Virus record (IMG/VR): IMGVR_UViG_3300042868_007959
Coordinates: 62,001-126,000 of that record
Strand: one strand, 5' to 3'
Length of the DNA: 64,000 nucleotides
The notes beneath the pieces are model-generated. The model was not told where the DNA came from. It saw only the letters and a list, made by a program, of their open reading frames with translations, and searched no databases. Within the stretch, counting starts at the first letter, position 1, and each line of letters begins with the position of its first letter. Both the position numbers and the translations under genes were made by a program. Shown one piece after another: positions 4,029 to 29,976 of the stretch.

Positions 4029-4451
4029 TTATAATTTTATTTCGAACCTATCTTTCATTATTTGAATTTTGTCTTCAGGAACACCATGTTCATTTATACC
4101 TTCGTGTCTATTTTCTACAATAATTGAGAACACTTTATAATCATACTGTTTTGCCAACTCATAATAACGTTCCATTTCCCATTCTTGTGTAAATGTATTA
4201 GAAACTGCAATCTCTCTGTAGAAGTTATCGTTAATCAGTGAATCCTTCATATATGTTTCAACTGTATCCTGACAGAATTTATGTGCGTCTTTGATTTTAC
4301 TAAAATCAAAATTATATTCTCCAGTCTCTTTATCGACAAAATATTTGTCCGCCTCACAAACTAAAAAATCGTGTTCCACTAATCTTTTGGCGAATGTAGA
4401 TTTACCTGAACCAGGTACTCCTCTTACTATATATAAAATTTTATCATCCAT
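4029..4451 (-). CDS. P-loop kinase (AAA_33 / polynucleotide-kinase-like)
   Basis: IVRGVPGSGKST Walker A; EAD; VSNTFTQEWEM; NEHGVP. Confidence 0.85.
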   Translation of the reverse strand: MDDKILYIVRGVPGSGKSTFAKRLVEHDFLVCEADKYFVDKETGEYNFDFSKIKDAHKFCQDTVETYMKDSLINDNFYREIAVSNTFTQEWEMERYYELAKQYDYKVFSIIVENRHEGINEHGVPEDKIQIMKDRFEIKL

Positions 4452-4469
4452 TTTATTCTGATTTAAAGG

Positions 4470-4685
4470 TTAACAACTTTCTTGATATTCTTTTCCTCCT
4501 TGTGTAATAGCATCTAATACTCTAAATAAAGGAACTAATATAGTACCATTGGTATAGACTTCTTCTTTATCTTTAAAACTATAATCAATTATAAAATCAA
4601 TAATCTTAAGCTGCTCATCTGTCAATGTTGTAGAATCTAATCTACTTTTTACAGATATATCATTTTTTATTTCTTCTTTGTCCAT
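4470..4685 (-). CDS. Hypothetical protein
   Basis: ORF track 4470-4760; more likely start MDKEEIK at 4685. Confidence 0.6.
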   Translation of the reverse strand: MDKEEIKNDISVKSRLDSTTLTDEQLKIIDFIIDYSFKDKEEVYTNGTILVPLFRVLDAITQGGKEYQESC

Positions 4686-4790
4686 CTTATTTTGATTTAG
4701 GTAGTTTTTATTAGGATACGGATATTGCAATAATAGCGATAAAAGTAAACCATATGACAACTACGATTATTGTTACTAAATTTGGGTTTT

Positions 4791-4973
4791 TCATCTTTTA
4801 TATATCAAATAAGTTACTACCAAAATAACGATTAAAAGTAATACTGGTATCCACAATGGTGCAGTTACCCACCACCAACTCCAATCAACGTGATTAGTTA
4901 GTTTTAGAACCATAAAAATAAGGAATAGAATCATACCTAATCCTATCCCACTTGATGAACTGTTTTCACTCAT
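4791..4973 (-). CDS. Small membrane protein (LKL..vdWSWWWV.aPLW family common in phages)
   Basis: Two TM segments with WSWWWVTAPLW motif. Confidence 0.75.
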   Translation of the reverse strand: MSENSSSSGIGLGMILFLIFMVLKLTNHVDWSWWWVTAPLWIPVLLLIVILVVTYLIYKR

Positions 4974-4987
4974 AATTTATTATTTAT

Positions 4988-5644
4988 TTATATTCTTTTT
5001 TCGTGATGATCTTTTGGTAAACATAATTTTTTAATTGGTTGATTTTTAACAATGGTTAAAATTTCATCCAAAGATAAGGGACATAAATTATTACCATCTA
5101 CACCCACATCCAATGATTTACCGTCACCCAATCTTAAATTAGTTGGTAGGTGTACGTGACCATGTAAATGTATTGTACCATCATTCATACTATCCCACGA
5201 TGCAATTGGGTAGTGCATACAGACAAAAGAGTATTTGTCCATCAACCCCTTACCCAAAATAGATGGTCTACGAACATCTAAAAACAAATAGTCGTGTGTT
5301 GAGGAAAAAATATCTTGTATATCTTCTTTGTTTTTGCGAATGTGGTGATCGTGATTCCCATAAGTTAAATGAACATTCTTACAGATTATTCTATTACGAA
5401 ATTCCTCTATTTTCTCAAATCCACCAAAACTCCAATCACCCAAATGAATCAATACATCATCTTCACCAACAACCTCATTAATATTATTCACTAATGTGTC
5501 ATTCATATGATTGAGTGAATTAAACTTACGTGTTAGCTTTTCTGCACCAACCCAACCAGTTGTTGCAGAACAAATATTTGCGTGATTATAATGTGTATCA
5601 CTCGTAAAAAATAACCGTTGCCCTTTTTCTAATACTAATTTCAT
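4988..5644 (-). CDS. Calcineurin-like metallophosphoesterase
   Basis: SDTH, LGDWS, GNHD, HYP, HGHVH, DVGVD motifs. Confidence 0.92.
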   Translation of the reverse strand: MKLVLEKGQRLFFTSDTHYNHANICSATTGWVGAEKLTRKFNSLNHMNDTLVNNINEVVGEDDVLIHLGDWSFGGFEKIEEFRNRIICKNVHLTYGNHDHHIRKNKEDIQDIFSSTHDYLFLDVRRPSILGKGLMDKYSFVCMHYPIASWDSMNDGTIHLHGHVHLPTNLRLGDGKSLDVGVDGNNLCPLSLDEILTIVKNQPIKKLCLPKDHHEKRI

Positions 5645-5667
5645 TTTACAAATATATTTATAATTTT

Positions 5668-6318
5668 TTAATATTCCAAACTTTTAGGTAAAAATAATAG
5701 GGTTGGGTTCTTCTTTTGAATATCTAAGTTTGGGTATTCCTCTTTAAATTTCATCACGTCAAACTTCTTAGTGATTAAATGGTACCCATTTTTAGTTGGG
5801 ATAATAGCTTCAATCTTTGGACCAACTTCATGTCCAATTGGTATTCCTACCTCGTCAAATTTAACTTTGGTAATTGGATTACATTTATATTCAATAAATG
5901 CCATCATTACTGGACTAGGTATATGACTATCATCGATATCTATAATCCACCTCTTCTCGTGAGTTTTAATTTGACCAACAACTGAGTCAAATAAACCTTG
6001 TTGTTTATCTACACCATCTCTAATACGTTCTGCCAGTATCGCCAACATATTAAGGGAAACATCCTTATGGTTTTGTTTCTGAACATGAATATATGCCCTC
6101 GCCTTAAACATTTCACAAAGTTGTTTAATCTCGTCATACCTCTTTTCAAGATGATCAATAGATTCTATACAGTAAGTTTTAATTGTTCTTACTGACTGAT
6201 GATTATCTCTTTCCCCTTCAGGTTGATCCTTTTTACGTTTAAAAACATATAACATATAAAAATCACCTTTATCAGTGAAATGTAATAGTGGTTTTATTAA
6301 TTCTAAGTTATCTATCAT
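5668..6318 (-). CDS. Conserved phage protein with AEP/primpol-like motifs
   Basis: WIIDIDD (hhhDhD) and TKNGYHL (sxH) resemble AEP motifs I and II. Confidence 0.6.
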   Translation of the reverse strand: MIDNLELIKPLLHFTDKGDFYMLYVFKRKKDQPEGERDNHQSVRTIKTYCIESIDHLEKRYDEIKQLCEMFKARAYIHVQKQNHKDVSLNMLAILAERIRDGVDKQQGLFDSVVGQIKTHEKRWIIDIDDSHIPSPVMMAFIEYKCNPITKVKFDEVGIPIGHEVGPKIEAIIPTKNGYHLITKKFDVMKFKEEYPNLDIQKKNPTLLFLPKSLEY

Positions 6319-7370
6319 AGTTTCCTAAATTTTGGTTTTAAAGCACTCCATATAATTTTATCATAATCTTTACCATCCCACATCGCAAACATAATTGCCT
6401 TTGCAATTGGATGGTGATTCTTAATATGTTCCGCAAATTCTTTCTTAGTTGGTTCTACTTCTATATCACCGTATTTACCAAATCTAAAATAATCATAAGT
6501 TTTACCTAGTTGGTTATAGTATTGGTACCAATGATACCCCAAACTACTGGCGTAAGTTTTAATCTTACCATAAAATTCATCAGGAACATCTTTAAGAAAA
6601 TCTTCTATTTTACCACCACTAGATAAAATTTCCCATACAGTTGTAGTTGATACATTTGTCATTATTTTATGTAATCTGAGATATTCTTCACCCTTTATCT
6701 TCATTCTGTCACCATTAGAAAATTTAACTACATAACCCTCTTCATCATCTTTTATTATATTTTTTAAGGTAGTAAAATCAGTTATGCCATCATATTTTTT
6801 AACTACTCTGAATCCTATATTTTGAATTAAATTTTTTAATCTTAAATCTACATCTTCACTATGTAAGACAACTTCATTTTCGGTTTTAGTATTTATCATA
6901 CCTAATAACACTAAATCCTCAAAATCATACTGTACCACTATTCGATTATCATCGTATATGATTTCAAATAAATAAGTATAATCTTTATGTAACTTATCGT
7001 AATCATATTTTTGTAATAAATCAAAACCCTTTATAGATTGTTCAGAAGTGAATGAACCTCTAGTTGCCAATACCCATTGATCACCATAATGAAATAGAAT
7101 TCCTAATGAACCATCCATTTTATCATAAACGTCAAATTCAGATGTGGTAGTATGTTTACCTTCTTCCATATTAAAGAATTTTTTAAATGGTCTACCAACA
7201 ATATCACCATCGGAATTTGTTACTAATCCCCTACACATCAGAGTTATATTATCCCATAATGATTCGTATTGTACTTTTTCACTATAATTCCAAATAGTTA
7301 GATCCAAAGTAGGGTGAACTTGTTTATGTAATAAACCCTTATCAAAATATTCATTTAAAATTTCATTCAT
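6315..7370 (-). CDS. T4 Rnl1-type RNA ligase
   Basis: CRGLV, PFKKFFN, motif I KMDGSLG, LFEII, EGYVV, KIKGEEY. Confidence 0.92.
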   Translation of the reverse strand: MNEILNEYFDKGLLHKQVHPTLDLTIWNYSEKVQYESLWDNITLMCRGLVTNSDGDIVGRPFKKFFNMEEGKHTTTSEFDVYDKMDGSLGILFHYGDQWVLATRGSFTSEQSIKGFDLLQKYDYDKLHKDYTYLFEIIYDDNRIVVQYDFEDLVLLGMINTKTENEVVLHSEDVDLRLKNLIQNIGFRVVKKYDGITDFTTLKNIIKDDEEGYVVKFSNGDRMKIKGEEYLRLHKIMTNVSTTTVWEILSSGGKIEDFLKDVPDEFYGKIKTYASSLGYHWYQYYNQLGKTYDYFRFGKYGDIEVEPTKKEFAEHIKNHHPIAKAIMFAMWDGKDYDKIIWSALKPKFRKL

Positions 7371-7444: not shown

Positions 7445-8959
7445 TTAAACATTTTCTAAAACCTTAGTCAATCTTTCTCTAATTTGAGTAAGGGTTGTTT
7501 GGTTATAAAATACACCATCTTCATAGATTGCTTTTAAATCACCAGTATTTTCACCCGACCAAGTTTGTTGATCAACTAATTTATACCCACCTTCACCTGT
7601 TGTTACTCTAAGTAATCCAGTTGCAGATTTTTTGGTACCATCGTCAGTGATTGGATCTTTGAATATTTCACGACCCTCAATTGAGAATGATGGACTTCCT
7701 GACTCCGCCATATGTTTAACTTCAACATAGGTTGCTTTCATTGCGAATCCAAATGTATCACGTGTGTTGTATTGGTAAGTGAATGAACCGATACCCAAAA
7801 CAACATTTGTTGATGCAAATCCTTTTGCTTCTAATCTAGCGCAAATTTCATTTGCTCTATCGATTGTAATTGAGTCGCCATAGATTGCTCCGATATGTGG
7901 ATCAAGTACTTTATAACCTTGTTCGTTTATTGTTCCACCGAATACATCCCAAAGCAATTCAATAACACCTTTAAGTTCAGGCATTAATTCGGTTCCTTTT
8001 TCATTACCTAATTTAATTCCACAAATAATATCAACTGGATCACCAGAGTCAGGACGAATAACCAATTTACCATCACGACTCATAATTTCTTCTTTCAAAG
8101 TAACTACGTGTTCAGTACATACTTTCCACAAGTCCCATGTATCGGATACTACTGAAAGGATTCCAGTTGGGTATGTTTCTAATAATCTACGGAATGTTTC
8201 TATTTCATCTTCTTTACCACCAGCACACATTACTGAATGTTCTGTCGCATTTACTGAACCACCAACAAAACCTTCTTCACCGTAATATTTACGAGCCCCA
8301 TAAATTGCTGGAAGTGAATCTGTTCCTGAGAATGATGTTAGATGTCCAATACCTGATGAAATAGTTGCATCGATTGAGTCTAATCCTCTCATTGAGAAGT
8401 CGTGTCCTTGCCAATCAACAAACCAAGCTCTTTCAGTATCGGTTTTTTCTTGCCAAGATGTTAATACCTTTCTGTAGTTATGTGCAATGGTTGCTGAAGT
8501 CATTGGTTTCCAAAGTAAGTTAGAGATAATCGTCTCCAAATAATTAGTTACCCAATAAAAATCAGGATGTGTATTGTAGATTGTTAACACAGGAATCTTT
8601 TCCCCAATTACAGAACCCTCCTCAATTGACTTTACCTTAATAGGTAAGTATTGTAAATCCCAAAGAGCTTCAAAATGTGATACATCATAATCTGTGTTAA
8701 GATACATAGATAATTCTTTTTTCATTTCTCCACAAACATGTTCTTTTGGTTGGTGGAAGAAATCTTTCTCGAATGATTCATGAATTATTTTCATAACCAT
8801 TTGTTGACCAAAAGACACTATCTCTTTACAGTGTTTTGGTGCGTGTTTCAAACTTCTAGGTGTGAAATTTGAATAGACTAATGTTGTACCCTTTGGATAC
8901 TGCTGATGATGTCCTGTTTTGTAACCATCTGTTAAAAGTAACGGATTGATGTTTCTCAT
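7445..8959 (-). CDS. nadV: Nicotinamide phosphoribosyltransferase-like (NAMPT/Namat)
   Basis: LLTDGYKTGH, HDFSMRG, NATEHSVM, SVVSDTWD, IRPDSGDP, IYGDSIT, GIGS, KKSATG. Confidence 0.95.
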   Translation of the reverse strand: MRNINPLLLTDGYKTGHHQQYPKGTTLVYSNFTPRSLKHAPKHCKEIVSFGQQMVMKIIHESFEKDFFHQPKEHVCGEMKKELSMYLNTDYDVSHFEALWDLQYLPIKVKSIEEGSVIGEKIPVLTIYNTHPDFYWVTNYLETIISNLLWKPMTSATIAHNYRKVLTSWQEKTDTERAWFVDWQGHDFSMRGLDSIDATISSGIGHLTSFSGTDSLPAIYGARKYYGEEGFVGGSVNATEHSVMCAGGKEDEIETFRRLLETYPTGILSVVSDTWDLWKVCTEHVVTLKEEIMSRDGKLVIRPDSGDPVDIICGIKLGNEKGTELMPELKGVIELLWDVFGGTINEQGYKVLDPHIGAIYGDSITIDRANEICARLEAKGFASTNVVLGIGSFTYQYNTRDTFGFAMKATYVEVKHMAESGSPSFSIEGREIFKDPITDDGTKKSATGLLRVTTGEGGYKLVDQQTWSGENTGDLKAIYEDGVFYNQTTLTQIRERLTKVLENV

Positions 8960-8979
8960 TTTTTATTTTTATTTATTTA

Positions 8980-9456
8980 TTATTCAAAGTTAGTGATAAA
9001 AAAGTTATCAGTCAAAAGATTTTCAATATTTTCATATAAAGGTATATTATATCTTTCACAAACTATTTCAACATTACCCTTTCTCCAAAAACCTTCTGGA
9101 CAACAAACCAATAGTTTCCCACTAGACGCATATAATCCTAATTCCAATAAAGATATCGGTGATTTTGAATCAGGTAATAAGTAAAGGATTATAATATCCG
9201 ATTTATTAAGTGCGTCTAATTCCCAATTAACTTGTTGATAGAACTGTGGGTTTTCTATTTTTTGTTCCCAAGAAGAATCCCATTCGTCTCTGCGTGGGTT
9301 TAGAATAGTATAAGGTATGTCTTTTAAAATTACAGTTACTTTCGTTTGCCAATCTTCTGAATTACCCATTTCAATTGTACCCGCCAAAAATACTTTAGTA
9401 AACCCTTTTTTACTATTTTTAACTACTGACTGAGGTGCTTTAATTACATTTTTCAT
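8980..9456 (-). CDS. Nucleoside 2-deoxyribosyltransferase-like protein
   Basis: VFLAGTI...DWQ...LNPRR...QVNWELDAL...SPISLLELG. Confidence 0.85.
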   Translation of the reverse strand: MKNVIKAPQSVVKNSKKGFTKVFLAGTIEMGNSEDWQTKVTVILKDIPYTILNPRRDEWDSSWEQKIENPQFYQQVNWELDALNKSDIIILYLLPDSKSPISLLELGLYASSGKLLVCCPEGFWRKGNVEIVCERYNIPLYENIENLLTDNFFITNFE

Positions 9457-9618
9457 TATTGTTTTTTTATATAAAATTTTCTATTAGGTTCATCATAATC
9501 TAAAGACATATCTCTAATTAGTGCCGAATATACCCAATTACATAACATTTCATTAGGACATATACAGACTAACTGATCATTTATTATTTCTCCATTATCA
9601 GGATCAATATCATTATAT

Positions 9619-9873
9619 CTAATCTCTATCATTTAGTTCTGTGATTACTTTTATTCTTTGTGTAGGAACTTCTATTATTGATTTATCGCATGATTTGATA
9701 GTAGTAATACCACTATCACTACTACTTACTGAAGTACAATCCATTTCCGTTCCATCAGTGAAAACAACGTGTTGATCACATTTTTTATCATCTTCAATTA
9801 TTAGATATAAAATGATACCATAACCTAATGATATAGTTAATGCAATTAGTATAATTCTTGTTATTCTATTCAT
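9619..9873 (-). CDS. Hypothetical membrane-anchored protein
   Basis: N-terminal TM helix, Cys-containing beta domain. Confidence 0.65.
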   Translation of the reverse strand: MNRITRIILIALTISLGYGIILYLIIEDDKKCDQHVVFTDGTEMDCTSVSSSDSGITTIKSCDKSIIEVPTQRIKVITELNDRD

Positions 9874-9875
9874 AA

Positions 9876-10757
9876 TTAAAATACATTAATTTGTGTTAAA
9901 TAATCTTTGTTAACAGTATAGTCTGAATTATATTCTACATCATAATTTGATCTTGAATTAGTACAATATATGTGTTTAATATGCTGACTTAATTCATATA
10001 ATCCGTTTGAGAAAATACCGTGAGTTATTGCTAATGAAACATTTGCCAATGGTCTTTCTTTATGTATTGCCTTAGCGATTTCGATAAAGGTTCTTCCACC
10101 GTCACAAATATCATCAACAATTAAAAAGTCATTAATTTTAGAATCGATAAAATCTAATGGAACATGAGTACTTAAAATTTTACCACTTTTAATGTCTCTA
10201 TGTTTTGACGCAATTAAAATATCTCTATCGTATTCTAATTTTTCTGCCAAATTATAAACCTTTTTCAATGCTCCCGCATCTGGTGAAACCAAAGTAAATG
10301 AATCAACTGCATTCCTTAGACTAATTTTATTATATTCTGTTAATGCAACTTTGATGAACCAAGAATTATCTGAAACTATTAAGTTGTTAATACAGGCAGG
10401 CGCTACATCACTATGAACATCAATACATGTTACTGATTCATAATTTTGTGCATTTATAATAGGTGCAATAACATCTCTTAAATAAGATGTACCACCAGTT
10501 ACAAATTGTCTATCACTTCTCGCCCCTAATATGTATGGGATGTATAAATGTATTTTCTCCACTTTTAGATTTCTAAGTGCCTTAGTTGCACATAATATTA
10601 ATTCTAAATCTTTAAAAGAATTAAACCTAGACTTAATGGTTACTTCTTTTATAGGAAAAGTATGACTCCCAATAACGATATCTTGTTGTCCATCAGGAAA
10701 TTTAGATATCTTATATTTTATATTACTATTTTCTAAATTTTCTAAATTTAATTTCAT
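9876..10757 (-). CDS. prs: Ribose-phosphate pyrophosphokinase-like (Prs/Adps)
   Basis: FPDGQ, PYILGARSDR, DVHS, VSPDAGA, IVDDICDGGRTF, THGIFS. Confidence 0.92.
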   Translation of the reverse strand: MKLNLENLENSNIKYKISKFPDGQQDIVIGSHTFPIKEVTIKSRFNSFKDLELILCATKALRNLKVEKIHLYIPYILGARSDRQFVTGGTSYLRDVIAPIINAQNYESVTCIDVHSDVAPACINNLIVSDNSWFIKVALTEYNKISLRNAVDSFTLVSPDAGALKKVYNLAEKLEYDRDILIASKHRDIKSGKILSTHVPLDFIDSKINDFLIVDDICDGGRTFIEIAKAIHKERPLANVSLAITHGIFSNGLYELSQHIKHIYCTNSRSNYDVEYNSDYTVNKDYLTQINVF

Positions 10758-10769: not shown

Positions 10770-12371
10770 TTAAAGTGGTAAAGTAGTAAAATCTATTTTA
10801 TTATTTTTATCTCTACTAAAGATGATATGTTGTGCCCTACCATCATTATGGATGATAACATGTGTCTGTAACCAACCACTAGGACCATTATTATACCCAA
10901 CTCTTAGTTTTGTACTCGTACCTACTGCCAATGCCCCATCTTTACGTCCTGGTGAGTGATAATGTCCAACAACAATTTTAGTATTCAATTTACGAAATTG
11001 TTGTAAAGAACCTCTACTACCATTAGATCCAACGTCACCATGTTGTCCTAGTTCCCAATTCTTCACTTTGTAAGAATCATTTCTACCTAATGTGATAAAT
11101 TTAGGGTATCTCTCATTGATGATGTCAGGTATTACACCTTTAACGTCACTAGGATTTTCACCGTATTGTTTTAAAAGTCTGGAACTTAAATCCATATACA
11201 ATGGTGCGTTTTTAAATGTAGGTTGTTTTTTCCAATCCTCATTTTTTAACCATCTATCTACAAAGTCATCATGATTTGATCTAACTATAACCACATTTTC
11301 AAAATCACTAAATCTATCTAGTTGATCCATCATAGTGAATATTTCTTTACCTAAATCATTAGTCCCATTCATTTCTTTACCATATTGTACAAATGGATCT
11401 TTCATCTGGTGGTGACTTATAGAGTCTCCATCAAATACATCATGTAGAATAACATGTTTAGGGACTAAATCTACCATTAAATCAAATGTAGATTCTAATA
11501 CATCTTCATCGTGATGTCCGTAGTGAAGGTCACCTAAAATTATCGCAGATACGGATGAATTTTTATTAACGACACCTTTTTCTACTCTATTATATAAGTC
11601 TGAAAAATTACCACTCTTATCATCGGCAGTTACTTGTCTGACAAAAAATGTATCTTCATCTTTAATTTCCACAATAACAAAACCAAAAGTATGATGAAAT
11701 TCACCTTTCTTACCTGATTTAGAATCAGTGTAATTCTTTTTAGTTATTGATCCTGTCGTTAACATCATCTTAGGTTTTTGTTTAACTAAAACAGGTATTG
11801 TCTCCATATGTACCTTTGGTGAACCAAAAATACAAGAATTAATTCCACTCAAACCTTGTAATCCTGTCATAGGATCAACTGCGGTTGGTTGTATTTTAAC
11901 ATCTGATAGAATAGAAACATATTTATGTATGTCATGTCTATTAGCATCTAAGTACTTAACTATCTTACTATCCCAAAATTCGTTATTTTCTTGATTACTA
12001 GTCCATACAGATGTTGGATTTTTGTATCTACCTGCAATAACATGTATATCAGCACCCAAATGATTTGCGTATGCCTCCATATTGGTGAGTAATCCGTTAT
12101 GGACAGGTGTATTATTTTGTGCCCAAGTAATTAAAAATATCTTTTTATCTTTATCATACTTTTTTAATTTGGCAGCCTCAAATTGTTCCGACTCTTTATC
12201 TACTTTCTCTTTGAAATTAAATTTCTCCGAACACCATTTTCTTATAGTCCTTTCCGATCTATCGAAATACTCAATTAGAATTGACATTCTCTCATCCCAC
12301 TTTAAGTTTTTGTCAGTGTAGATGGAATAAGCATGTTCTATGTCTTTTTCTGTTACATCTTTAAATTTCAT
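10770..12371 (-). CDS. Large metallophosphoesterase-family protein with HTH-like N-terminus
   Basis: GDLH, HDVFDG, SNHD, HGD, GHYH motifs in C-terminal half; SERTIRKW near N-terminus. Confidence 0.7.
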   Translation of the reverse strand: MKFKDVTEKDIEHAYSIYTDKNLKWDERMSILIEYFDRSERTIRKWCSEKFNFKEKVDKESEQFEAAKLKKYDKDKKIFLITWAQNNTPVHNGLLTNMEAYANHLGADIHVIAGRYKNPTSVWTSNQENNEFWDSKIVKYLDANRHDIHKYVSILSDVKIQPTAVDPMTGLQGLSGINSCIFGSPKVHMETIPVLVKQKPKMMLTTGSITKKNYTDSKSGKKGEFHHTFGFVIVEIKDEDTFFVRQVTADDKSGNFSDLYNRVEKGVVNKNSSVSAIILGDLHYGHHDEDVLESTFDLMVDLVPKHVILHDVFDGDSISHHQMKDPFVQYGKEMNGTNDLGKEIFTMMDQLDRFSDFENVVIVRSNHDDFVDRWLKNEDWKKQPTFKNAPLYMDLSSRLLKQYGENPSDVKGVIPDIINERYPKFITLGRNDSYKVKNWELGQHGDVGSNGSRGSLQQFRKLNTKIVVGHYHSPGRKDGALAVGTSTKLRVGYNNGPSGWLQTHVIIHNDGRAQHIIFSRDKNNKIDFTTLPL

Positions 12372-12425: not shown

Positions 12426-13160
12426 TTATAATTCAAATGTGGGTTTTAACCAAAGTCCTCTACTGAATATTAATTTAGTAAAACCTGGTATTCTTTGTTC
12501 CACCATACCAAATAAAGTTAATGTCGCCACAGTATCATGTTTCATCATTTTTAAAACTTCCTCTCTGATTCTTTCTGCAGATACAACATCTTTAAGTTTA
12601 TCCATTATTTCAGGTTGTTCCATAGCCCTAAAAATAGACTGGTGTATGAAGAATCCTTTAGTGATAGAAAATCTTAATGCCCTAAGAAATCTGAGTGGAT
12701 CATCCATCATTGTTTGTTCGGCAGGTAAAGGAGTTTTTAGTAGTCTCGCACTTAAATGACCTTTACCGCCAAATAAATCAATTAGATTCCCATTTTCATC
12801 TTCCGCCATCGAATTCAATGTGAAATCTCTTCTAATTAGATCATCTTCTAATGTCCCTAATTCTAAAATAGGTTGTCTAGTCCCTTCTTTGTAACCGACC
12901 TCTTTTCTTGCGAGAACAAAGTCCGCAACTAATCCTTCGTTAACATCACCTTTAGGAAATTTAGCTCTGATAGTGAACATCTCTGGAGTAGAAAGGAATA
13001 TAGTAAACTCTTTATGTTCCATCCATTGTTTCATTATTTCGAAACCTTCATCTACTGTTCTATCTATGTTGTCGAGTACAAATGTGAAGTCAATATCTTT
13101 AGATTCAACACCTAAGATACTATCTCTTACACAACCACCAACTTTATATATCTGAGGCAT
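12426..13160 (-). CDS. cca: CCA-adding tRNA nucleotidyltransferase (class II, short)
   Basis: VGGCVRD, KDIDF, RRDFTLN, DLFGG, DDPLRFLRA, SAERIREE; adjacent to CCA-less tRNAs. Confidence 0.88.
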   Translation of the reverse strand: MPQIYKVGGCVRDSILGVESKDIDFTFVLDNIDRTVDEGFEIMKQWMEHKEFTIFLSTPEMFTIRAKFPKGDVNEGLVADFVLARKEVGYKEGTRQPILELGTLEDDLIRRDFTLNSMAEDENGNLIDLFGGKGHLSARLLKTPLPAEQTMMDDPLRFLRALRFSITKGFFIHQSIFRAMEQPEIMDKLKDVVSAERIREEVLKMMKHDTVATLTLFGMVEQRIPGFTKLIFSRGLWLKPTFEL

Positions 13161-13625: not shown

Positions 13626-13643
13626 GTATTTTAATTGTTTATG

Positions 13644-13717
13644 TGGTCCTTGTTGGAATCGAACCAACCACCTACTGATTATGAGTCAGTTGCTCTAACC
13701 GAATGAGCTAAAGGACC
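13644..13717 (-). tRNA. tRNA-Ile2/Met (CAT), Ile2-like body
   Basis: GGTCCTT/AAGGACC acceptor, CT-CAT-AA loop, TTCGATT T-loop; no CCA. Confidence 0.9.
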
Positions 13718-13878
13718 AATTAGCGGAGATTTCATCCCATCCATTGATCACCCAAGGACTCGTTTCTAATGTATTTGGCACTCCGCCATTGTAAGTTTTC
13801 TGTTGCTTACGCCCTCATTCGTGGACTTCCGACATCCCAATGAGTTTTACCGTCCTATCGGAGTCAGGTAACCGCTTG

Positions 13879-13970
13879 TAGTCAGGACAGGACTCGAACC
13901 TGTATGTACAGTTATACAGAACTGCACATCCCTGTATGGATATTTGCGTCTACCATTTCGCCACCTGACT
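13879..13970 (-). ncRNA. tRNA-scaffold element F (non-canonical anticodon arm)
   Basis: AGTCAGG/CCTGACT acceptor, Leu-type D arm, ACAGG-TTCGAGT-CCTGT T arm; 42-nt insert with two hairpins. Confidence 0.8.
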
Positions 13971-14080
13971 ATAAAAACACACTCTTCAGCTTTCTACTTC
14001 CAGCTCCGAGAAATTATATATAACTTAGCCCATCTCACCGCTGTATGGGAACTGAAGTTTATGTGTCTTAAGGTTGAGAG

Positions 14081-14157
14081 CCTCTGTGTTGTAATGTTAA
14101 TTCTACATTTACATTATTTATTACGTTTAATTCCTTTCTCAAGGGAACAACACAATA
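14081..14157 (-). repeat. Structured repeat copy 1 (GAGA-tetraloop three-way motif)
   Basis: Shares identical 12-nt and 25-nt blocks with 15604-15674. Confidence 0.75.
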
Positions 14158-14161
14158 ATTA

Positions 14162-14237
14162 TAGATAGGGTGGGATTCGAACCCACAATGAACAACCTTA
14201 AAAGGACTCGGCACCGTGCCTCATTACGCTCCTACCT
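14162..14237 (-). ncRNA. tRNA-scaffold element G
   Basis: AGGTAGG/CCTATCT acceptor, GTGGG-TTCGAAT-CCCAC T arm; no canonical anticodon arm. Confidence 0.7.
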
Positions 14238-14243
14238 ACACTG

Positions 14244-14320
14244 AACTACCCATAGGACTCGAACCTACAACCCTTCGGCCTTAGTGACCAATGTGCAAAC
14301 CAATTTACACCATAAGTAGT
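14244..14320 (-). tRNA. tRNA with CTA anticodon (amber-suppressor-like; non-canonical A33)
   Basis: ACTACTT/GGGTAGT acceptor; TTGGT-CA CTA AG-GCCGA anticodon arm; canonical T arm. Confidence 0.65.
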
Positions 14321-14416
14321 TAATCAAGAAAACATATCAGAAATTACTGGTACCAAATCTCACTGCGATATATGATACATCTTCTTGTTAGGATTGGTTA
14401 ATTACTCCTATCTTTG

Positions 14417-14488
14417 TACTCCCACGGAGAATCGAACTCCGATTTTCAGGATGAAAACCTGATGTCCTAACCGTTAGACGATGGGAGC
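14417..14488 (-). tRNA. tRNA-Glu(TTC)
   Basis: Full cloverleaf; TCAGG-TT TTC AT-CCTGA. Confidence 0.95.
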
Positions 14489-14707
14489 AAATTGTGACAA
14501 CCTTTGGGTTCGATTGTCACTTTTACGTGAAAGGAGTGATCAGACCCTCTAACATCACGAGTGTAAGTTTTTCACATTAAACTATCTCTACAAAACGTCA
14601 GTTTTTATCGCCCTTAAACTGAATAAACGGTTTGACACTTTGTATCCCCTTTTTTAAGTGCGTGATACATCTTCTCTCAAACTGAACTCTACTGAGAACA
14701 CTCCCTG

Positions 14708-14779
14708 CGGTCTATGAGAGAATCGAACTCTCGGCACATCCGTGACAGGGATGTATGTTAGCCACTACACTAATAAACC
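14708..14779 (-). tRNA. tRNA-Asp(GTC)
   Basis: CATCC-CT GTC AC-GGATG; G73. Confidence 0.95.
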
Positions 14780-15004
14780 AAGTTTCCCCACTCTGAGATT
14801 ACAAGTGAGTAGTCGTATCGGTTTTTTTTCTATTTGAAAAACCTGATGGGCATCCCCGTTGAAAAAGTCAGCTCTATACGTCAGCAGTGCAGAACCTCGC
14901 TACTGTTATTCTGAATCGATTGCCTTAGGGAGGCGTTTTTTAACCCTATCCATTGTTAAATGAGTCTTGGATAAAAGACTACTGAGTATCTCTTACTCAT
15001 TATG

Positions 15005-15161
15005 TAGTTGGGGTAGGACTCGAACCTACATAAACACTTTGAAATTTACCTACGCACCGTGAGGTAGTGTTCTTCATCATTTGCATTGCCTAACCATTGA
15101 TCGATTTTACGTTTCGGCTGCCGTGCGTGTCAATAAGCGTCTACCATTTCGCCACCCAACC
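15005..15161 (-). ncRNA. tRNA-scaffold element E (107-nt structured insert)
   Basis: GGTTGGG/CCCAACT acceptor, GCGAAATGGTAGACGC D arm, GTAGG-TTCGAGT-CCTAC T arm. Confidence 0.8.
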
Positions 15162-15209
15162 ATACTACATCTCCTTTCGATTCTATAAGGAATCTACTCC
15201 GTTCTGTTG

Positions 15210-15283
15210 TACACCCGCCAGGATTCGAACCTGGGACCTATTCATTAGAAGTGAATTGCTCTATCCAGCTGAGCTACGGGTGC
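15210..15283 (-). tRNA. tRNA-Arg(TCT)
   Basis: ATTCA-CT TCT AA-TGAAT. Confidence 0.95.
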
Positions 15284-15502
15284 AAATAAAAGATGATAAA
15301 TGGATTTATCAGGAATCTGGCTATAACCATAAACACTTCCTATAATTTCTATACTATTGTCATTAGCGTATATGAGCTTCACACACCATTAGAGAGTCGG
15401 GTTGTTACATCAATACAATTAAGATCGAATACCTTTCCTTAGTGTGTACCTTTGCGTCACGTCTCTCCACGCTTACCATTCTACGCTTTGTATCATCTTT
15501 TG

Positions 15503-15586
15503 TACTCGAATCGGGACTTGAACCCGAACGGGCAATTGCCCACAAGATTTTAAGTCTGGCGTGTCTACCGATTCCACCATCCGAGC
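15503..15586 (-). tRNA. tRNA-Leu(TAA)
   Basis: CCAGA-CT TAA AA-TCTTG; long variable arm. Confidence 0.95.
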
Positions 15587-17079: not shown

Positions 17080-18027
17080 TTACTTAATGTTTAGGAATGT
17101 TCCTGATCCACCTGCTACAGTAGTTGGTAATTTTCCATCCCATTTCTGAGCCTTTAAAAACTCAACGTATAAAGGTGTAATCTCTTTTTGTTTGAGTTTC
17201 ATTGTTAAGGCAGATGCTTGTGCATCAATCACTGATTTCGCAGAATCACCTCTAGCAATTGCAATTTTCTCAAACGCCTCTGCCTGTGCAACCAAAGTAC
17301 GTTGCTGAGCCGCCTGTGCCTCTTGTACCGCTTTAGTTTTACCTTCGATAGCTTTTTGTAGTGACTTAGGTGGGATAATATTAGTACGTAACTGAGATAC
17401 TGTAAACCACTTAGATACTCTTTTATTACACTCCACTATGATAGCTGATTCAAATTCTTCTCTTTTATTAAAGATTGCGTCAACTTCCCAACGATTGGCT
17501 ACATCATTAACAGATGATACGATAGCGTTCTTTAACCATCCCTGCTCAATCTCTTTAATGTCTAATCGAAGGTTGGTAAACATATCCCCAATCGCATCTT
17601 CTCTAAGTGAATAGTTAAAAGACGGTTTGATTGTTGCGGCAAACCCACCTTTTGTGATAACTTGTTGTGCATCGTACTCAATGTGTTGTTGAAACAGTGG
17701 GAATTCTTTTACTTGTTCCGTCCAATCGTTATAAACAACCCATCCTGTTTTGTACTGATACTTTGCAACACCTCTTTCAGAACCAGTTAAATTAACTTTA
17801 AGTCCTTTGTTACCCGCATCAATTCTCTCAATTGCGAATGGTTGTAATAATCCAACCAAAATCGATAAAAATAAAATTCCGATAGGTTTTACTAACCACT
17901 TTGAGTTAAAATTGTCACTATCATCACCCCATCGATCCTTTCCTGTAATATACATTACATCTTTTGTTGTAAACGCAGTAAATACTGCGACTAATAACCC
18001 AATAATAAAAATACTAAATCCAATCAT
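17080..18027 (-). CDS. SPFH/band-7/prohibitin domain membrane protein
   Basis: Two TM helices, RIDAGNKGLKV..., coiled-coil KTKAVQEAQAA, KWDGKLP tail. Confidence 0.88.
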   Translation of the reverse strand: MIGFSIFIIGLLVAVFTAFTTKDVMYITGKDRWGDDSDNFNSKWLVKPIGILFLSILVGLLQPFAIERIDAGNKGLKVNLTGSERGVAKYQYKTGWVVYNDWTEQVKEFPLFQQHIEYDAQQVITKGGFAATIKPSFNYSLREDAIGDMFTNLRLDIKEIEQGWLKNAIVSSVNDVANRWEVDAIFNKREEFESAIIVECNKRVSKWFTVSQLRTNIIPPKSLQKAIEGKTKAVQEAQAAQQRTLVAQAEAFEKIAIARGDSAKSVIDAQASALTMKLKQKEITPLYVEFLKAQKWDGKLPTTVAGGSGTFLNIK

Positions 18028-20557: not shown

Positions 20558-21310
20558 TCATAAACCTCTTTCTTTCATTAAATCAACATATTCTTTTTGT
20601 TTCTCAATTAAAATATATTGTCTATTATTATTTTTTGCTGCTAGTCCTGTAGTCCCCGTTCCAGCAAAACAATCTAAAACAACCTCACCTTCTTTTGTTG
20701 TTAATAATAAACAAGTTTCAGGTAGGGCTATGGGAAATCCTCCGTGCCCATATTGTGATTTAGTTTCTTTTCTACCAAAATCATTTTTGGATACTTTATT
20801 ACCTTGATTAAATGGTATTTCCCAAACATTACCCACATTTTTTGTTTTGAAGATAGTAGGATTTTTATTATATGCTCCATCTTTATTTAAATCAACACCA
20901 GCCGATGTATGTCTTAACATAAACACATACTCAACCTGATTGGTTAATTGTCTATTAGAATTACAAGGTTGTTGATTAAATCTATACCATATTACCGTAT
21001 CGTGTAATTTATACATCAATTCTTCTGTTGCAATATTTAATATCTCAAATGCTCTAGTAGTTACTTCACTATCATTTATTACATTTAACCATAATGTTCC
21101 TGTTGGTTTAAGAACTCTCTTACATTCAATTAACCACTTCTTAGTCCATCTAATATATTGGGCATAAGAATTGAAATATGCTTCATAAGCAAATCCCTTC
21201 CAATAAGGAGGTGATGTGATAATACAATCAATACTACCATCCTTTAATTTTTTTAATTCTTCTATACAATCCCCTTCTATTATTGATTGGTGATTTACTT
21301 TTTTTTCCAT
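20558..21310 (-). CDS. N4-C/N6-A DNA methyltransferase (beta class)
   Basis: ITSPPY (motif IV) before VLDCFAGTGTT (motif I). Confidence 0.92.
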   Translation of the reverse strand: MEKKVNHQSIIEGDCIEELKKLKDGSIDCIITSPPYWKGFAYEAYFNSYAQYIRWTKKWLIECKRVLKPTGTLWLNVINDSEVTTRAFEILNIATEELMYKLHDTVIWYRFNQQPCNSNRQLTNQVEYVFMLRHTSAGVDLNKDGAYNKNPTIFKTKNVGNVWEIPFNQGNKVSKNDFGRKETKSQYGHGGFPIALPETCLLLTTKEGEVVLDCFAGTGTTGLAAKNNNRQYILIEKQKEYVDLMKERGL

Positions 21311-29083: not shown

Positions 29084-29149
29084 AATAAACGTTTTATAAC
29101 AACAAATATAGATATTAATTTCTATATAAACAAATTTTTTTAAAAATAG

Positions 29150-29224
29150 TACCAAAGGTGAGATTCGAACTCACAAACCTTTGTTTCTAAGACAAAGAGG
29201 TATACCGATTCCCGTCACTTTGGC
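29150..29224 (-). tRNA. tRNA-Leu(TAG), short variable loop
   Basis: TTTGT-CT TAG AA-ACAAA; 5-nt variable region. Confidence 0.88.
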
Positions 29225-29230
29225 ATTTTG

Positions 29231-29303
29231 AGCAGGTAGAGAGAATCGAACTCTCGTCCTCTGATTGGAAGTCAGACATAATAAGCCACTATACGATACC
29301 TGC
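29231..29303 (-). tRNA. tRNA-Gly(TCC)
   Basis: TCTGA-CT TCC AA-TCAGA; U73. Confidence 0.95.
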
Positions 29304-29473
29304 ATTAAGATTATTTTCTCTTAATCTTTTTTTTTAATTTAATAAATTTTATTAATCTTATTAAATTAATAGAATTTTTTCTAGACTCGATAATATTAAA
29401 ATTATCTTTCGATGATCTACCAGAACCCGTCATTACCTCTCTCATACTTATTTATTTTACTTTTTATTATTTG

Positions 29474-29547
29474 TGGATACATCTCGGCTTCGAACCGAGG
29501 ACTCCTGAGTGCAAATCAGGTGTGATAGCCAGCTTCACCAATGACCC
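29474..29547 (-). tRNA. tRNA-Ala(TGC), one-nt acceptor bulge
   Basis: CCTGA-TT TGC AC-TCAGG; G3:U70. Confidence 0.85.
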
Positions 29548-29550
29548 AAA

Positions 29551-29628
29551 TGGTTGCGGGACTGGGACTCGAACCCAGAACTTCGGCTTATGAGACCGAC
29601 GAGATAACCAATTTCTACATATCCCGCA
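29551..29628 (-). tRNA. tRNA-Met(CAT), initiator-like, CCA encoded
   Basis: TGCGGGA/TCCCGCA-A-CCA; TCGGT-CT CAT AA-GCCGA. Confidence 0.92.
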
Positions 29629-29661
29629 ATTTTTAATTACACCGAATTCGGTATAATTGAG

Positions 29662-29736
29662 TTCCCCCGACAGGATTCGAACCTGTGGCCCGTACATTAA
29701 AAGTGTAATGCTCTAAACCAACTGAGCTACGAGGGA
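29662..29736 (-). tRNA. tRNA-Lys(TTT)
   Basis: TTACA-CT TTT AA-TGTAC. Confidence 0.93.
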
Positions 29737-29742
29737 TTGTTG

Positions 29743-29814
29743 AGGTTTCGCTCAGATTCGAACTGAGGACACTTGATTACAAATCAAGAGTTTTACCGAC
29801 TAAACTACAAAACC
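29743..29814 (-). tRNA. tRNA-Thr(TGT)
   Basis: CTTGA-TT TGT AA-TCAAG. Confidence 0.93.
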
Positions 29815-29820
29815 TAATTG

Positions 29821-29894
29821 TCACCCGTATGGGATTTGAACCCATGATCTTTTCCGTGAAAGGGAAACGACTTAAACCGCTTGTCCAACGGGCG
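29821..29894 (-). tRNA. tRNA-Glu(TTC)
   Basis: TTTCC-CT TTC AC-GGAAA. Confidence 0.93.
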
Positions 29895-29902
29895 ATATTT
29901 AG

Positions 29903-29975: not shown

Positions 29976-29976
29976 G

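What the first reader, a model, noticed from the sequence alone, without database searches (positions are those of the whole stretch)
7445..10757. NAMPT-like + Prs-like pair: NARP1-type NAD+ reconstitution anti-defence
Both genes lie in one operon and no NMNAT is seen in the window. This matches the phage NARP1 pathway (Prs-like Adps makes ADPR-PP, NAMPT-like Namat joins nicotinamide), which rebuilds NAD+ destroyed by Thoeris/DSR/SIR2/TIR defences. Assignment to NARP1 rather than ordinary salvage is inference.
Basis: partly seen in the sequence, partly recalled or inferred. Interest (0 to 1): 0.6.

Follow-up and report, generated by a model that had tools for sequence, protein, structure and literature searches.

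The report
Phage NAD+ rebuilding operon, extra enzyme
An uncultured freshwater jumbo phage carries the known two-enzyme NARP1 pathway that rebuilds NAD+ destroyed by bacterial defences, and a nucleoside-deoxyribosyltransferase-like gene sits inside the operon that turns out to travel with such pathways in many phages and has not been linked to them before.

Summary
Window 7445-8959(-) encodes a 504-aa NAMPT-family protein. Window 9876-10757(-) encodes a 293-aa Prs-like protein. They lie on the same strand with three short ORFs packed tightly between them.

The NARP1 reading is supported by published diagnostics:
- The NAMPT-like protein carries the Namat adenine-clamp motif GSFTYQYNTRD.
- It scores 511 bits to the SPbetaL1 Namat crystal structure, against 207 bits or less to true NAMPTs.
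- It sits inside the Adps-linked Namat clade, apart from the KVP40-type Nampt.
- The Prs-like protein has the Adps donor loop DDICDGGRTF, the Lys185 equivalent and the acceptor residues.
- It groups with ICP1 Adps, away from nine gammaproteobacterial Prs.
- The 254-kb contig has no NMNAT, PnuC, Macro or RyR gene.

So this is an ordinary new member of NARP1.

The new part is the 158-aa PF15891 "NDT-like" gene between the two:
- In 60 dereplicated metagenomic loci its commonest neighbours are Namat/Nampt (33) and Adps (28), in at least 20 gene orders. Some of these loci are NARP2-type.
- All 10 cultured phage groups that carry it also encode a Nampt/Namat homologue.

It is probably an unreported NARP accessory enzyme. 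Its substrate is unknown.

The parts
7445..8959 (-). namat: nicotinamide ADP-ribose transferase (NAMPT family), 504 aa
   Evidence: Pfam NAPRTase plus NAMPT_N; phrog_448 at E 4e-187. Best PDB matches are 9W5X/9W5W, the SPbetaL1 Namat, at E 2.5e-152 and 511 bits, against 207 bits or less for NAMPTs. The SCH motif GSFTYQYNTRD lies at residues 391-401. Residues D11, Y13, F188, R191, D214, H241, R302, D304, G361 and D362 are conserved. The protein lies inside the Namat clade.
8980..9456 (-). NDT-like gene (Pfam PF15891, Nuc_deoxyri_tr2), 158 aa; candidate NARP accessory N-glycosidase or N-ribosyltransferase
   Evidence: PF15891 at E 8e-37; phrog_30579. The AF2 model has pLDDT 87; its nearest fold is the uncharacterised 4mcj, followed by YtoQ, NDTs, MilB/BcmB and RCL. 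Family invariants are F23-L-A-G, R55, R56, E79 and E105. Co-location with Namat/Nampt and Adps is shown. Genome-level co-occurrence is 10 of 10.
9456..9632 (-). 58-aa acidic ORF of unknown function
   Evidence: It has no family hit. It is conserved at 75-86% identity between adps and the NDT-like gene in relatives L011/L103, L012 and L092.
9619..9873 (-). 84-aa ORF with a hydrophobic N-terminus (probable membrane anchor), unknown function
   Evidence: Translation. The only hit is a sub-threshold Pfam match. It has a 58% identical copy in the same position in L092 and weaker copies elsewhere in relatives.
9876..10757 (-). adps: ADP-ribose pyrophosphokinase (Prs-like), 293 aa
   Evidence: Pfam Pribosyltran; phrog_619. 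It scores below every NCBIfam Prs cut-off (89 bits against 113). The PP loop DDICDGGRTF and the equivalents of ICP1 F18, R87, F92, H121, D161, K185 and I194 are present; identity is 32% to ICP1 Adps and 21% to E. coli Prs. It clusters with phage Adps against nine Prs at 100% SH-aLRT.

Best explanation
This is a NARP1 NAD+ reconstitution module of an uncultured freshwater jumbo phage.

When a host NADase defence (Thoeris, DSR, SIR2-HerA, Sir2-Argonaute and the like) splits NAD+ into ADP-ribose and nicotinamide, two enzymes rebuild it:
- The Prs-like enzyme (Adps, 9876-10757) transfers the beta,gamma-pyrophosphate of ATP onto the terminal ribose of ADP-ribose, giving ADPR-PP and AMP.
- The NAMPT-like enzyme (Namat, 7445-8959) binds the adenine of ADPR-PP with its selectivity clamp and joins nicotinamide to it, releasing PPi and NAD+.

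What is shown here is sequence membership of both enzymes, their linkage, and the absence of the NARP2/NARP3 components. The chemistry and the anti-defence effect are inferred from characterised homologues.

The 158-aa NDT-like protein encoded between them is most likely a third, accessory enzyme of the module. It looks like a glutamate-nucleophile N-glycosidase or N-ribosyltransferase acting on a ribo-nucleotide-type substrate. This rests on gene association and conserved residues; its substrate is not known.
For: Namat:
- It scores E 2.5e-152 (511 bits) to the SPbetaL1 Namat structures 9W5X/9W5W, against 207 bits or less for NAMPT structures.
- It matches exactly the Namat-only motif GSXphiXphiXphiTRD defined in PMC12774641.
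- Among 101 phage homologues this motif separates cleanly from the KVP40-type GGGLLQ..(D/N/T)RD and tracks the presence of adps.
- In the IQ-TREE tree the Namat clade has 100% SH-aLRT on a branch of length 3.7, and the window protein sits inside it.

Adps:
- The PP loop DDICDGGRTF is identical over 12 residues to that of a Felixounavirus (the genus of Bas63).
- It shares D-D-I-C-D-G with ICP1 Adps, where E. coli Prs has DDMIDTGGTL.
- K185, F18, R87, F92, H121 and D161 are conserved.
- It is below the NCBIfam Prs cut-offs.
- It clusters with ICP1 Adps.

Context:
- The genes are on the same strand and tightly packed.
- The 254-kb contig has no NMNAT, PnuC, Macro or RyR gene.
- 66 of 80 related Namat loci also carry adps nearby.

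NDT-like gene:
- In 60 dereplicated loci its most frequent co-oriented neighbours are Namat/Nampt (33) and Adps (28); the next family reaches 13.
- 22 of 33 gaps are under 500 bp, and there are at least 20 gene orders.
- It also lies next to a Nampt-type gene in a NARP2-like locus that has an NMNAT-Nudix gene.
- It shares the slot with Macro-like genes, the known Adpp class.
- 10 of 10 cultured phage groups with it encode a Nampt/Namat homologue, against 4% of all phage records.
- It is fused to an ADP-ribosyltransferase domain in Tunturi_5 gp225.
Against: - No enzyme assay or phage phenotype exists for this locus.
- Namat enzymes also use PRPP in vitro (PMC12774641), so some NMN-type salvage cannot be excluded.
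- SPbetaL1 R40 is replaced by K38 (followed by H39) and A362 by S363.
- The Adps tree has only gammaproteobacterial Prs as the outgroup.
- The window Adps keeps a short C-terminal tail, so loss of the Prs alpha11-alpha12 module is only partly evident from the alignment.
- The contig is about 78% complete, so an NMNAT could lie in the missing part.
- For the NDT-like gene: in cultured phages it is in the same genome but not adjacent (7-107 kb away).
- Homologues 63-71% identical are stand-alone genes in Bacteroidota with uninformative neighbours.
- The loci sampled were those most similar to the window's gene, so lineage effects are not fully removed.
Confidence: 0.85

Rival explanations
1. Ordinary PRPP-based nicotinamide salvage. 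The Prs-like enzyme makes PRPP from ribose-5-phosphate, the NAMPT-like enzyme makes NMN, and a host NMN adenylyltransferase finishes NAD+. This would be NARP2-like chemistry using host help.
For: Both proteins belong to the Prs and NAMPT superfamilies. Namat enzymes retain PRPP-to-NMN activity in vitro (PMC12774641). The contig is only about 78% complete.
Against: - The protein has the Namat motif rather than the KVP40-type GGGLLQ motif.
- It lies in the Namat clade.
- The Prs-like protein has the Adps-type PP loop and falls below the Prs family cut-offs.
- No NMNAT is present.
- Published surveys found no phage encoding both NARP1 and NARP2, and found Prs-like genes next to Namat to be Adps in 97% of cases.
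Confidence: 0.07
2. The locus is core NARP1 only. The NDT-like gene and the two small ORFs are unrelated passengers, for example a nucleotide-pool enzyme like DNPH1 or MilB that happens to sit in a metabolic gene island.
For: - The gene is not adjacent to Nampt/Namat in cultured phages.
- Close stand-alone homologues exist in Bacteroidota chromosomes.
- 25 of 60 NDT loci show no Namat/Nampt within 10 kb.
- The sampled loci are related to one another.
Against: - Namat/Nampt and Adps are by far the commonest neighbours (33 and 28 of 60, against 13 for the next family). They occur in at least 20 arrangements and with both Namat-type and Nampt-type partners.
- Genome co-occurrence is 10 of 10.
- There is a fusion to an ADP-ribosyltransferase domain.
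- Phe occupies the MilB F17 position, which argues for a ribo-substrate rather than a 2'-deoxy substrate.
Confidence: 0.35
3. The genes are decayed or inactive relics without function.
For: None found.
Against: The ORFs are full length and align end to end with solved or validated homologues. All catalytic residues are intact. Relatives 67-91% identical are widespread in metagenomes.
Confidence: 0.02

Closest known systems
NARP1 of Bacillus phage SPbetaL1, Escherichia phage Bas63 and Vibrio phage ICP1 (Adps + Namat)
   Same: - It has the same two enzyme families on one strand.
- The Namat clamp motif is identical to that of SPbetaL1.
- The Adps PP loop, catalytic Lys and adenine-anchoring residues are conserved.
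- No NMNAT is present.
   Different: - Identity is only about 32% to ICP1 Adps and under 60% to any Namat in cultured phages.
- R40 is replaced by K38/H39.
- Three ORFs are inserted between the two genes.
- The host is unknown; the phage is a freshwater jumbo phage with about 30% GC.
Extended NARP1 operons: NARP1-AP (Macro-domain Adpp, Vibrio phage Gary) and NARP1 + RyDEP (mycobacteriophage DyoEdafos)
   Same: An extra small enzyme gene is inserted between or beside adps and namat. In relatives of this phage the NDT-like gene shares that slot with Macro-like genes.
   Different: The inserted gene here belongs to PF15891 (NDT-like), not Macro or RyR. The genome has no Macro or RyR gene. Its substrate is unknown and it also accompanies NARP2-type loci.
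NARP2 of Vibrio phage KVP40 (Nampt + NMNAT-Nudix)
   Same: It has a NAMPT-family enzyme that uses nicotinamide. The NDT-like gene family also accompanies such loci (L130).
   Different: The window protein has the Namat motif, not GGGLLQQLDRD. It is only about 31% identical to KVP40 Nampt and lies across a 100%-supported branch from it. No NMNAT is present.
NDT superfamily N-glycosidases and transferases (nucleoside 2-deoxyribosyltransferase, MilB/BcmB CMP N-glycosidase, RCL/DNPH1; PDB 4mcj and YtoQ)
   Same: It shares the fold (TM 0.81 to 4mcj; 0.5-0.6 to NDT/MilB). It has the N-terminal F-L-A-G motif, a conserved acidic residue (E79) and a Glu in S-x5-E that matches the nucleophile position.
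   Different: The nearest structures, 4mcj and YtoQ, have no assigned function. Sequence identity to characterised members is 13-19%. No member of the family has been tied to NAD+ reconstitution in the searchable literature.

Membership tests
NARP1 - Namat | Nampt-like catalytic core: nicotinamide- and ribose-phosphate-binding residues and the catalytic His | tested here: met
   D11, Y13, F188, R191, D214, H241, R302, D304, G361, D362, G391, S392 and R400 align with SPbetaL1 D13, Y15, F189, R192, D215, the catalytic His, R306, D308, G360, D361, G390, S391 and R399.
NARP1 - Namat | Selectivity-clamp helix motif GSXphi1Xphi2Xphi3TRD, with aromatics at positions 3 and 7 | tested here: met
   GSFTYQYNTRD lies at 391-401 and is identical to SPbetaL1. 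KVP40-type proteins have GGGLLQQLDRD instead.
NARP1 - Namat | Selectivity-clamp loop providing an adenine-stacking residue (Arg, or Lys/Tyr followed by the stacking residue) | tested here: inconclusive
   K38 aligns with SPbetaL1 R40 and is followed by H39. This fits the Lys-type pattern described in PMC12774641, but stacking was not modelled.
NARP1 - Namat | Placement in the Adps-associated Namat clade, separate from Nampt of NMNAT-encoding phages | tested here: met
   In the IQ-TREE quick tree of 46 sequences the Namat clade has 100% SH-aLRT and contains ICP1-like, Felixounavirus, mycobacteriophage and Bacillus phage Namats. The window protein is inside it. KVP40 and the T4-like phage are outside.
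NARP1 - Adps | Conserved remodelled PP loop (ICP1 Cys215-Ser220 region) and catalytic Lys185 | tested here: met
   The window has D-D-I-C-D-G-G-R-T-F; ICP1 has D-D-I-C-D-G-A-A-S-F; E. coli Prs has D-D-M-I-D-T-G-G-T-L. The Lys185 equivalent is present.
NARP1 - Adps | ADPR adenine anchors (Phe18, Arg87, Phe92) and acceptor residues (His121, Asp161, Asp212, Asp213) | tested here: met
   All are identical in the alignment. E. coli Prs has Val at the Phe92 position.
NARP1 - Adps | Loss of the C-terminal alpha11-alpha12 module of Prs | tested here: inconclusive
   The window protein is 293 aa against 315 aa for Prs and lacks the last ~15 aligned Prs residues. It keeps a short tail that aligns with part of the region. 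No structure was compared.
NARP1 - Adps | Clade separate from cellular Prs | tested here: met
   The split between 27 phage Prs-like proteins (including ICP1 Adps) and 9 Prs has 100% SH-aLRT. The outgroup is limited to Gammaproteobacteria. The protein is also below all NCBIfam Prs cut-offs.
NARP1 - system | adps and namat within ten genes of each other | tested here: met
   They are 917 bp and three ORFs apart on the same strand.
NARP1 - system | ADPR + ATP gives ADPR-PP; ADPR-PP + nicotinamide gives NAD+; rescue from NADase defences | not testable with these tools
   This needs LC-MS and plating assays.
NARP2 | Nampt-type enzyme plus NMN adenylyltransferase in the same genome | tested here: not met
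   The protein has the Namat-type motif. PF01467 is absent from the 254-kb contig, with controls ringing in 14 of 14 genomes. The only NUDIX gene is a stand-alone 133-aa one about 40 kb away.
NARP3 | PnuC-like transporter plus NadR-like enzyme | tested here: not met
   PF04973 gives no match. No cytidylyltransferase-like domain is present.
NARP1-AP / RyDEP extensions | Macro-domain Adpp or RyR-domain glycosidase in the operon | tested here: not met
   PF01661 and PF02026 give no match in the genome. tblastn with the Macro-like and HAD-like genes of relatives finds nothing.
NDT superfamily (PF15891) | Family profile match, flavodoxin-like NDT fold and a conserved Glu nucleophile | tested here: met
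   PF15891 scores E 8e-37. TM is 0.81 to 4mcj, with NDT/MilB/RCL among the matches. E105 and E79 are invariant in 41 homologues. Assignment of E105 as the nucleophile rests on motif spacing only.

The most novel reading that the evidence does not exclude
PF15891 NDT-like proteins are a third, so far unreported class of accessory enzyme of phage NAD+ reconstitution, alongside Macro-domain Adpp and RyR-domain RyDEP. They serve both NARP1 and NARP2.

There are two concrete readings:
(a) The protein is an N-glycosidase that opens or trims N-linked ADP-ribose derivatives made by TIR or other defences (for example N-linked cyclic ADPR isomers or base-ADPR conjugates). This would give plain ADPR, which Adps (NARP1) or the Nudix domain (NARP2) can use.
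(b) The protein is an AMP (ribonucleotide) N-glycosidase. It would remove AMP, which is a product of Adps and inhibits it (about 35% residual activity at 0.5 mM; PMC13586617), and would yield ribose-5-phosphate for PRPP.

The evidence shows the association. It does not choose between (a) and (b).
Probability: 0.5. Interest if true: 0.75.

Novelty: new variant of a known kind. Interest (0 to 1): 0.55.

Why it matters
The core result extends NARP1 to uncultured jumbo phages of lakes, which are probably Bacteroidota phages. It also shows that the published sequence rules (Namat clamp motif, Adps PP loop) separate NARP1 from NARP2 cleanly in metagenomic data. That part is expected.

The useful lead is the NDT-like gene. 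Known NARP1 add-ons each answer a specific host trick: Adpp answers aRES-made ADPR-1''-phosphate, and RyDEP answers Thoeris cyclic ADPR signals. A third add-on class that also accompanies NARP2 would point either to another host way of diverting NAD+ breakdown products or to a bottleneck in the pathway itself. It would also give a first function to a large uncharacterised protein family: more than 4,700 homologues, including PDB 4mcj.

Tried and rejected
- Megablast of the locus against cultured phages found only short 75-77% matches inside NAMPT genes, so there is no close cultured relative.
- The PDB copy held no Adps structure; the best hits were canonical Prs at E 3e-11. ICP1 Adps was therefore taken from a phage record.
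- The neighbourhood of the NDT-like gene in nine cultured phages showed no adjacent NAD genes.
- Bacterial neighbourhoods of close homologues in three Bacteroidota contigs were uninformative.
- A profile search of the NDT-like family against the PDB found only 4mcj. No residue-level alignment to MilB or NDT could be made, so the catalytic assignments rest on motif spacing.
- The sigma-70 promoter scan matched the shuffle expectation (54 found, 54.2 expected) and is uninformative.
The one genome-contig scan returned only gammaproteobacterial Prs, so the outgroup is narrow.
- Literature searches for PF15891, 4MCJ, YtoQ function, ART-PolyVal with deoxyribosyltransferase, and NARP with deoxyribosyltransferase found nothing relevant.
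- No RNA run holds the locus, so expression could not be checked.
- Complex prediction was not used because no physical binding is claimed.
- The two small ORFs gave no family matches.
Full report
WHAT IS THERE

The window is bases 62,001-126,000 of a single 253,879-bp virus contig. The record is an IMG/VR entry that CheckV rates about 78% complete. GC content is about 30% and almost all genes lie on the - strand.

The finding's coordinates are exact.
- 7445-8959(-) encodes a 504-aa protein. It matches Pfam NAPRTase plus NAMPT_N and phrog_448 'nicotinamide phosphoribosyl transferase' at E 4e-187.
- 9876-10757(-) encodes a 293-aa protein. It matches Pfam Pribosyltran and phrog_619 'ribose-phosphate pyrophosphokinase' at E 6e-64.

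The two genes are not neighbours. Three co-oriented ORFs lie between them:
- a 158-aa PF15891 'nucleoside 2-deoxyribosyltransferase-like' protein at 8980-9456;
- a 58-aa ORF at 9456-9632;
- an 84-aa ORF with a hydrophobic N-terminus at 9619-9873.

All gaps are 20 nt or less, or the ORFs overlap. The only terminator-like hairpin on this strand between 13.7 kb and 4.5 kb lies at 4949-4922. A shared transcript is therefore plausible but not demonstrated.

IS THE NAMPT-LIKE PROTEIN A NAMAT?

The structural paper on SPbetaL1 Namat (PMC12774641) separates two parts of the enzyme. The catalytic core is shared with Nampt. The adenine 'selectivity clamp' is specific to Namat, and its helix carries the consensus GSXphi1Xphi2Xphi3TRD with aromatic X.

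- The window protein reads GSFTYQYNTRD at 391-401.
- Its best solved relatives are the two SPbetaL1 Namat entries 9W5X/9W5W at E 2.5e-152 and 511 bits. A third entry, deposited as a nicotinamide phosphoribosyltransferase, scores 431 bits. True NAMPTs score 207 bits or less.
- From that alignment and a residue check, the SPbetaL1 contact residues checked here — D13, Y15, F189, R192, D215, R306, D308, G360, D361, G390, S391, F392, Y396, T398, R399 and D400 — and the catalytic His are identical in the window protein; two further contact positions differ, conservatively: R40 becomes K38 followed by H39, a pattern the paper describes for Bas63-type Namats, and A362, a backbone contact, becomes S363.
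- I aligned 101 non-identical phage homologues from IMG/VR loci and cultured phages. The motif falls into two classes. GS[FY]T[YM]Q.[NVM]TRD almost always has a Prs-like gene in the locus. GGGLLQ..[DNT]RD, as in KVP40, has none.
- In an IQ-TREE tree of 46 of these sequences, the first class forms a clade with 100% SH-aLRT on a branch of 3.7 substitutions per site. That clade contains ICP1-like, Felixounavirus, mycobacteriophage and Bacillus phage proteins. The window protein sits well inside it, sister to a relative with 84% identity.

IS THE PRS-LIKE PROTEIN AN ADPS?

The structural paper on ICP1 Adps (PMC13586617) names the following features:
- the acceptor residues Phe18, Arg87, Phe92, His121, Asp161, Asp212 and Asp213;
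- the catalytic Lys185;
- a remodelled, family-wide PP loop (Cys215-Ser220);
- loss of the C-terminal alpha11-alpha12 module.

I aligned the window protein with ICP1 Adps taken from a phage record, with other phage homologues and with E. coli K-12 Prs.
- All the named acceptor residues and Lys185 are identical in the window protein.
- The PP loop is DDICDGGRTF. ICP1 has DDICDGAASF, a Felixounavirus has DDICDGGRTF and E. coli Prs has DDMIDTGGTL.
- Identity is 32% to ICP1 Adps and 21% to E. coli Prs.
- The window protein is shorter than Prs at the C-terminus but keeps a short tail, so I score that feature as inconclusive.

It also falls below the curated cut-off of every NCBIfam ribose-phosphate diphosphokinase model: 89 bits against 113 for the subfamily model. 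In a tree with nine gammaproteobacterial Prs, the 27 phage proteins, including ICP1 Adps and the window protein, form one side of a 100%-supported split. The outgroup is narrow, which limits this test.

EXCLUSION OF THE OTHER PATHWAYS

- The whole contig has no cytidylyltransferase-like (NMNAT/NadR) domain, although the same search finds one in all 14 control genomes.
- It has no PnuC, no Macro domain and no RyR domain.
- The single NUDIX gene is a stand-alone 133-aa protein 40 kb away.
- The original survey found no phage with both NARP1 and NARP2. It found Namat next to 97% of Adps-clade genes.

I therefore file the pair as NARP1 with confidence about 0.85. Membership, linkage and absence of alternatives are shown. 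Chemistry and anti-defence function are inferred from characterised relatives.

THE GENE IN THE MIDDLE

Two published extensions of NARP1 put a small enzyme gene into the operon.
- The Macro-domain phosphatase Adpp converts aRES-made ADPR-1''-phosphate to ADPR.
- The RyR-domain glycosidase RyDEP opens Thoeris 2'/3' cADPR to ADPR.

I therefore asked whether the NDT-like gene is a passenger or a partner.

Metagenomic loci.
- Among the 80 IMG/VR loci most similar to the window Namat (67-91% identity), an NDT-like gene lies within about 8 kb in roughly 55 and adps in 66. The other window neighbours (CCA enzyme, the 216-aa protein, the phosphoesterase) recur in 17-18.
- Starting from the NDT-like gene instead, 47 of 80 loci have a Namat/Nampt homologue within 10 kb.
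- I dereplicated these to 60 loci at 90% NDT identity and clustered all co-oriented ORFs without prior labels. The commonest companions are Namat/Nampt (33 loci) and Adps (28). The next families reach 13 (a weak HAD-like hydrolase, and the phosphoesterase) and 11 (a weak Macro-domain match, probably Adpp).
- In 22 of the 33 loci the gap is under 500 bp, and at least 20 different gene orders occur.
- The partner is not always a Namat. In loci L127, L130, L134, L155 and L156 it is a Nampt-type protein (GGALLQ motif), and no adps was detected in those loci. L130 also carries an NMNAT-Nudix fusion, which makes it a NARP2-type locus.

Cultured phages.
- The gene is never adjacent to Nampt/Namat there.
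- Even so, all ten distinct groups tested encode a Nampt/Namat homologue somewhere in the genome: Tunturi_5, BUDD, Marchewka, Slickus01, Lak-B2, CcrColossus, RsoM2USA, DLP_6, Erythrobacter L02 and BL47.
- By comparison, 2,044 of 50,697 phage records have one. Even a generous 40% base rate for large genomes would give about 1e-4 for ten of ten. That base rate is my assumption and was not computed.
- In Tunturi_5 the domain is fused to an 'ART-PolyVal' ADP-ribosyltransferase domain in a 1,262-aa protein next to the portal gene.

No paper in the searchable library mentions a deoxyribosyltransferase-like protein together with NARP.

WHAT THE NDT-LIKE PROTEIN MAY DO

- The AlphaFold model is confident (pLDDT 87). 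It matches the uncharacterised Parabacteroides protein 4mcj (TM 0.81). After that come YtoQ, nucleoside 2-deoxyribosyltransferases, the CMP N-glycosidases MilB/BcmB, RCL and the retron Ec86 effector.
- Across 41 homologues the invariant residues include F23-L-A-G, R55, R56, E79, E105 and R125.
- The N-terminal F-L-A-G corresponds to the MilB motif F-L-(G/A)-(G/A). In MilB, F17Y reverses specificity from CMP to dCMP. The S99-x5-E105 spacing matches MilB S97...E103, where E103 is the nucleophile (PMC4081090).
- By inference from motif spacing only, the enzyme is an active Glu-nucleophile N-glycosidase or transferase that takes a ribose (not 2'-deoxyribose) phosphate-bearing substrate.

Two readings fit association with both NARP1 and NARP2.
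- It could trim N-linked ADPR derivatives to ADPR.
- It could hydrolyse AMP. AMP is a product of Adps and inhibits it, leaving about 35% activity at 0.5 mM. Hydrolysis would yield ribose-5-phosphate.

The stand-alone Bacteroidota homologues at 63-71% identity favour a general nucleotide role. The fusion to an ADP-ribosyltransferase favours an NAD/ADPR role. I cannot decide between the two readings. I put about 0.5 on the gene being a true functional accessory.

CONTEXT

- The NARP1 genes are flanked by an RNA-repair-like set: an AAA_33 kinase, a metallophosphoesterase, an Rnl1-type RNA ligase and a CCA-adding enzyme.
- A T5 A1-like gene lies upstream, and there are two tRNA clusters totalling 28 genes.
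- The locus occurs in lake-water metagenomes from many studies. No RNA data were found.
- The close Bacteroidota homologues of the NDT-like gene and the low GC content suggest a Bacteroidota host. This is only a hint.

VERDICT

The Adps-Namat pair is a regular new member of NARP1, which is already known. The embedded NDT-like gene makes the locus a probable new variant and is the part worth following up.

Noticed in passing
window 13643-15586 and 29149-32417: There are 28 tRNA genes in two clusters on the - strand, covering nearly all amino acids. One 93-nt call at 13878-13970 has a four-base anticodon (taca) and no assigned amino acid.
   Followed up: no
window 37794-38192: ARAGORN calls a tmRNA-like gene with a 30-residue tag peptide inside the phage contig. 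It was not checked against Rfam.
   Followed up: no
window 4029-7370 and 12426-13160: An RNA-repair-like set flanks the NARP1 genes: an AAA_33 kinase (4029-4451), a metallophosphoesterase (4988-5644), an Rnl1-type RNA ligase (6315-7370) and a CCA-adding enzyme (12426-13160). This suggests a counter-defence island against tRNA-cleaving systems.
   Followed up: partly
window 10770-12371: A 533-aa protein matches phrog_1745 'DNA transfer protein' (T5 A1-like) and has a metallophosphoesterase-like stretch. It ends 12 nt upstream of adps. Homologues also lie near NDT-like genes in L114-L117, L128 and L138.
   Followed up: no
L030:6225-6659 and L100:11923-12396 (relatives): Related NARP loci carry two more recurrent small genes between or beside adps, the NDT-like gene and namat. 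One is a weak HAD-like hydrolase (13 of 60 loci). The other is a weak Macro-domain match (11 of 60), probably Adpp. Neither is present in this genome.
   Followed up: partly
L003:5001-8789 (Tunturiibacter phage Tunturi_5 gp225): A 1,262-aa protein annotated 'MutT/NUDIX hydrolase' shows an N-terminal PF15891 NDT-like domain fused to an ART-PolyVal ADP-ribosyltransferase domain. It lies next to the portal gene.
   Followed up: partly
L165:2974-4467 and L164:4685-6178 (Vibrio phages JSF14 and ICP1): The Namat reading frame is annotated as a 37-aa ORF plus a 439-aa ORF. The N-terminal ~50 residues that match other Namats lie in a separate short ORF.
   Followed up: no
Ralstonia phage RsoM2USA 10771-12156: The Nampt/Namat homologue of this phage is matched through two in-frame stops (one TAG, one TAA), so it may be broken or misassembled.
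   Followed up: no
window 20558-21310, 40325-41230, 41236-42144: There are three DNA methyltransferase genes. There is also an SPFH/Band 7 gene at 17080-18027, and a Band 7 gene recurs near the NARP locus in relative L030.
   Followed up: no
window 8980-9456 versus Bacteroidota genomes: The phage NDT-like protein is 63-71% identical to stand-alone chromosomal genes of Chitinophagales, Saprospiraceae and Neolewinella. This hints at a Bacteroidota host or at recent gene exchange. The locus is found in lake-water metagenomes.
   Followed up: partly
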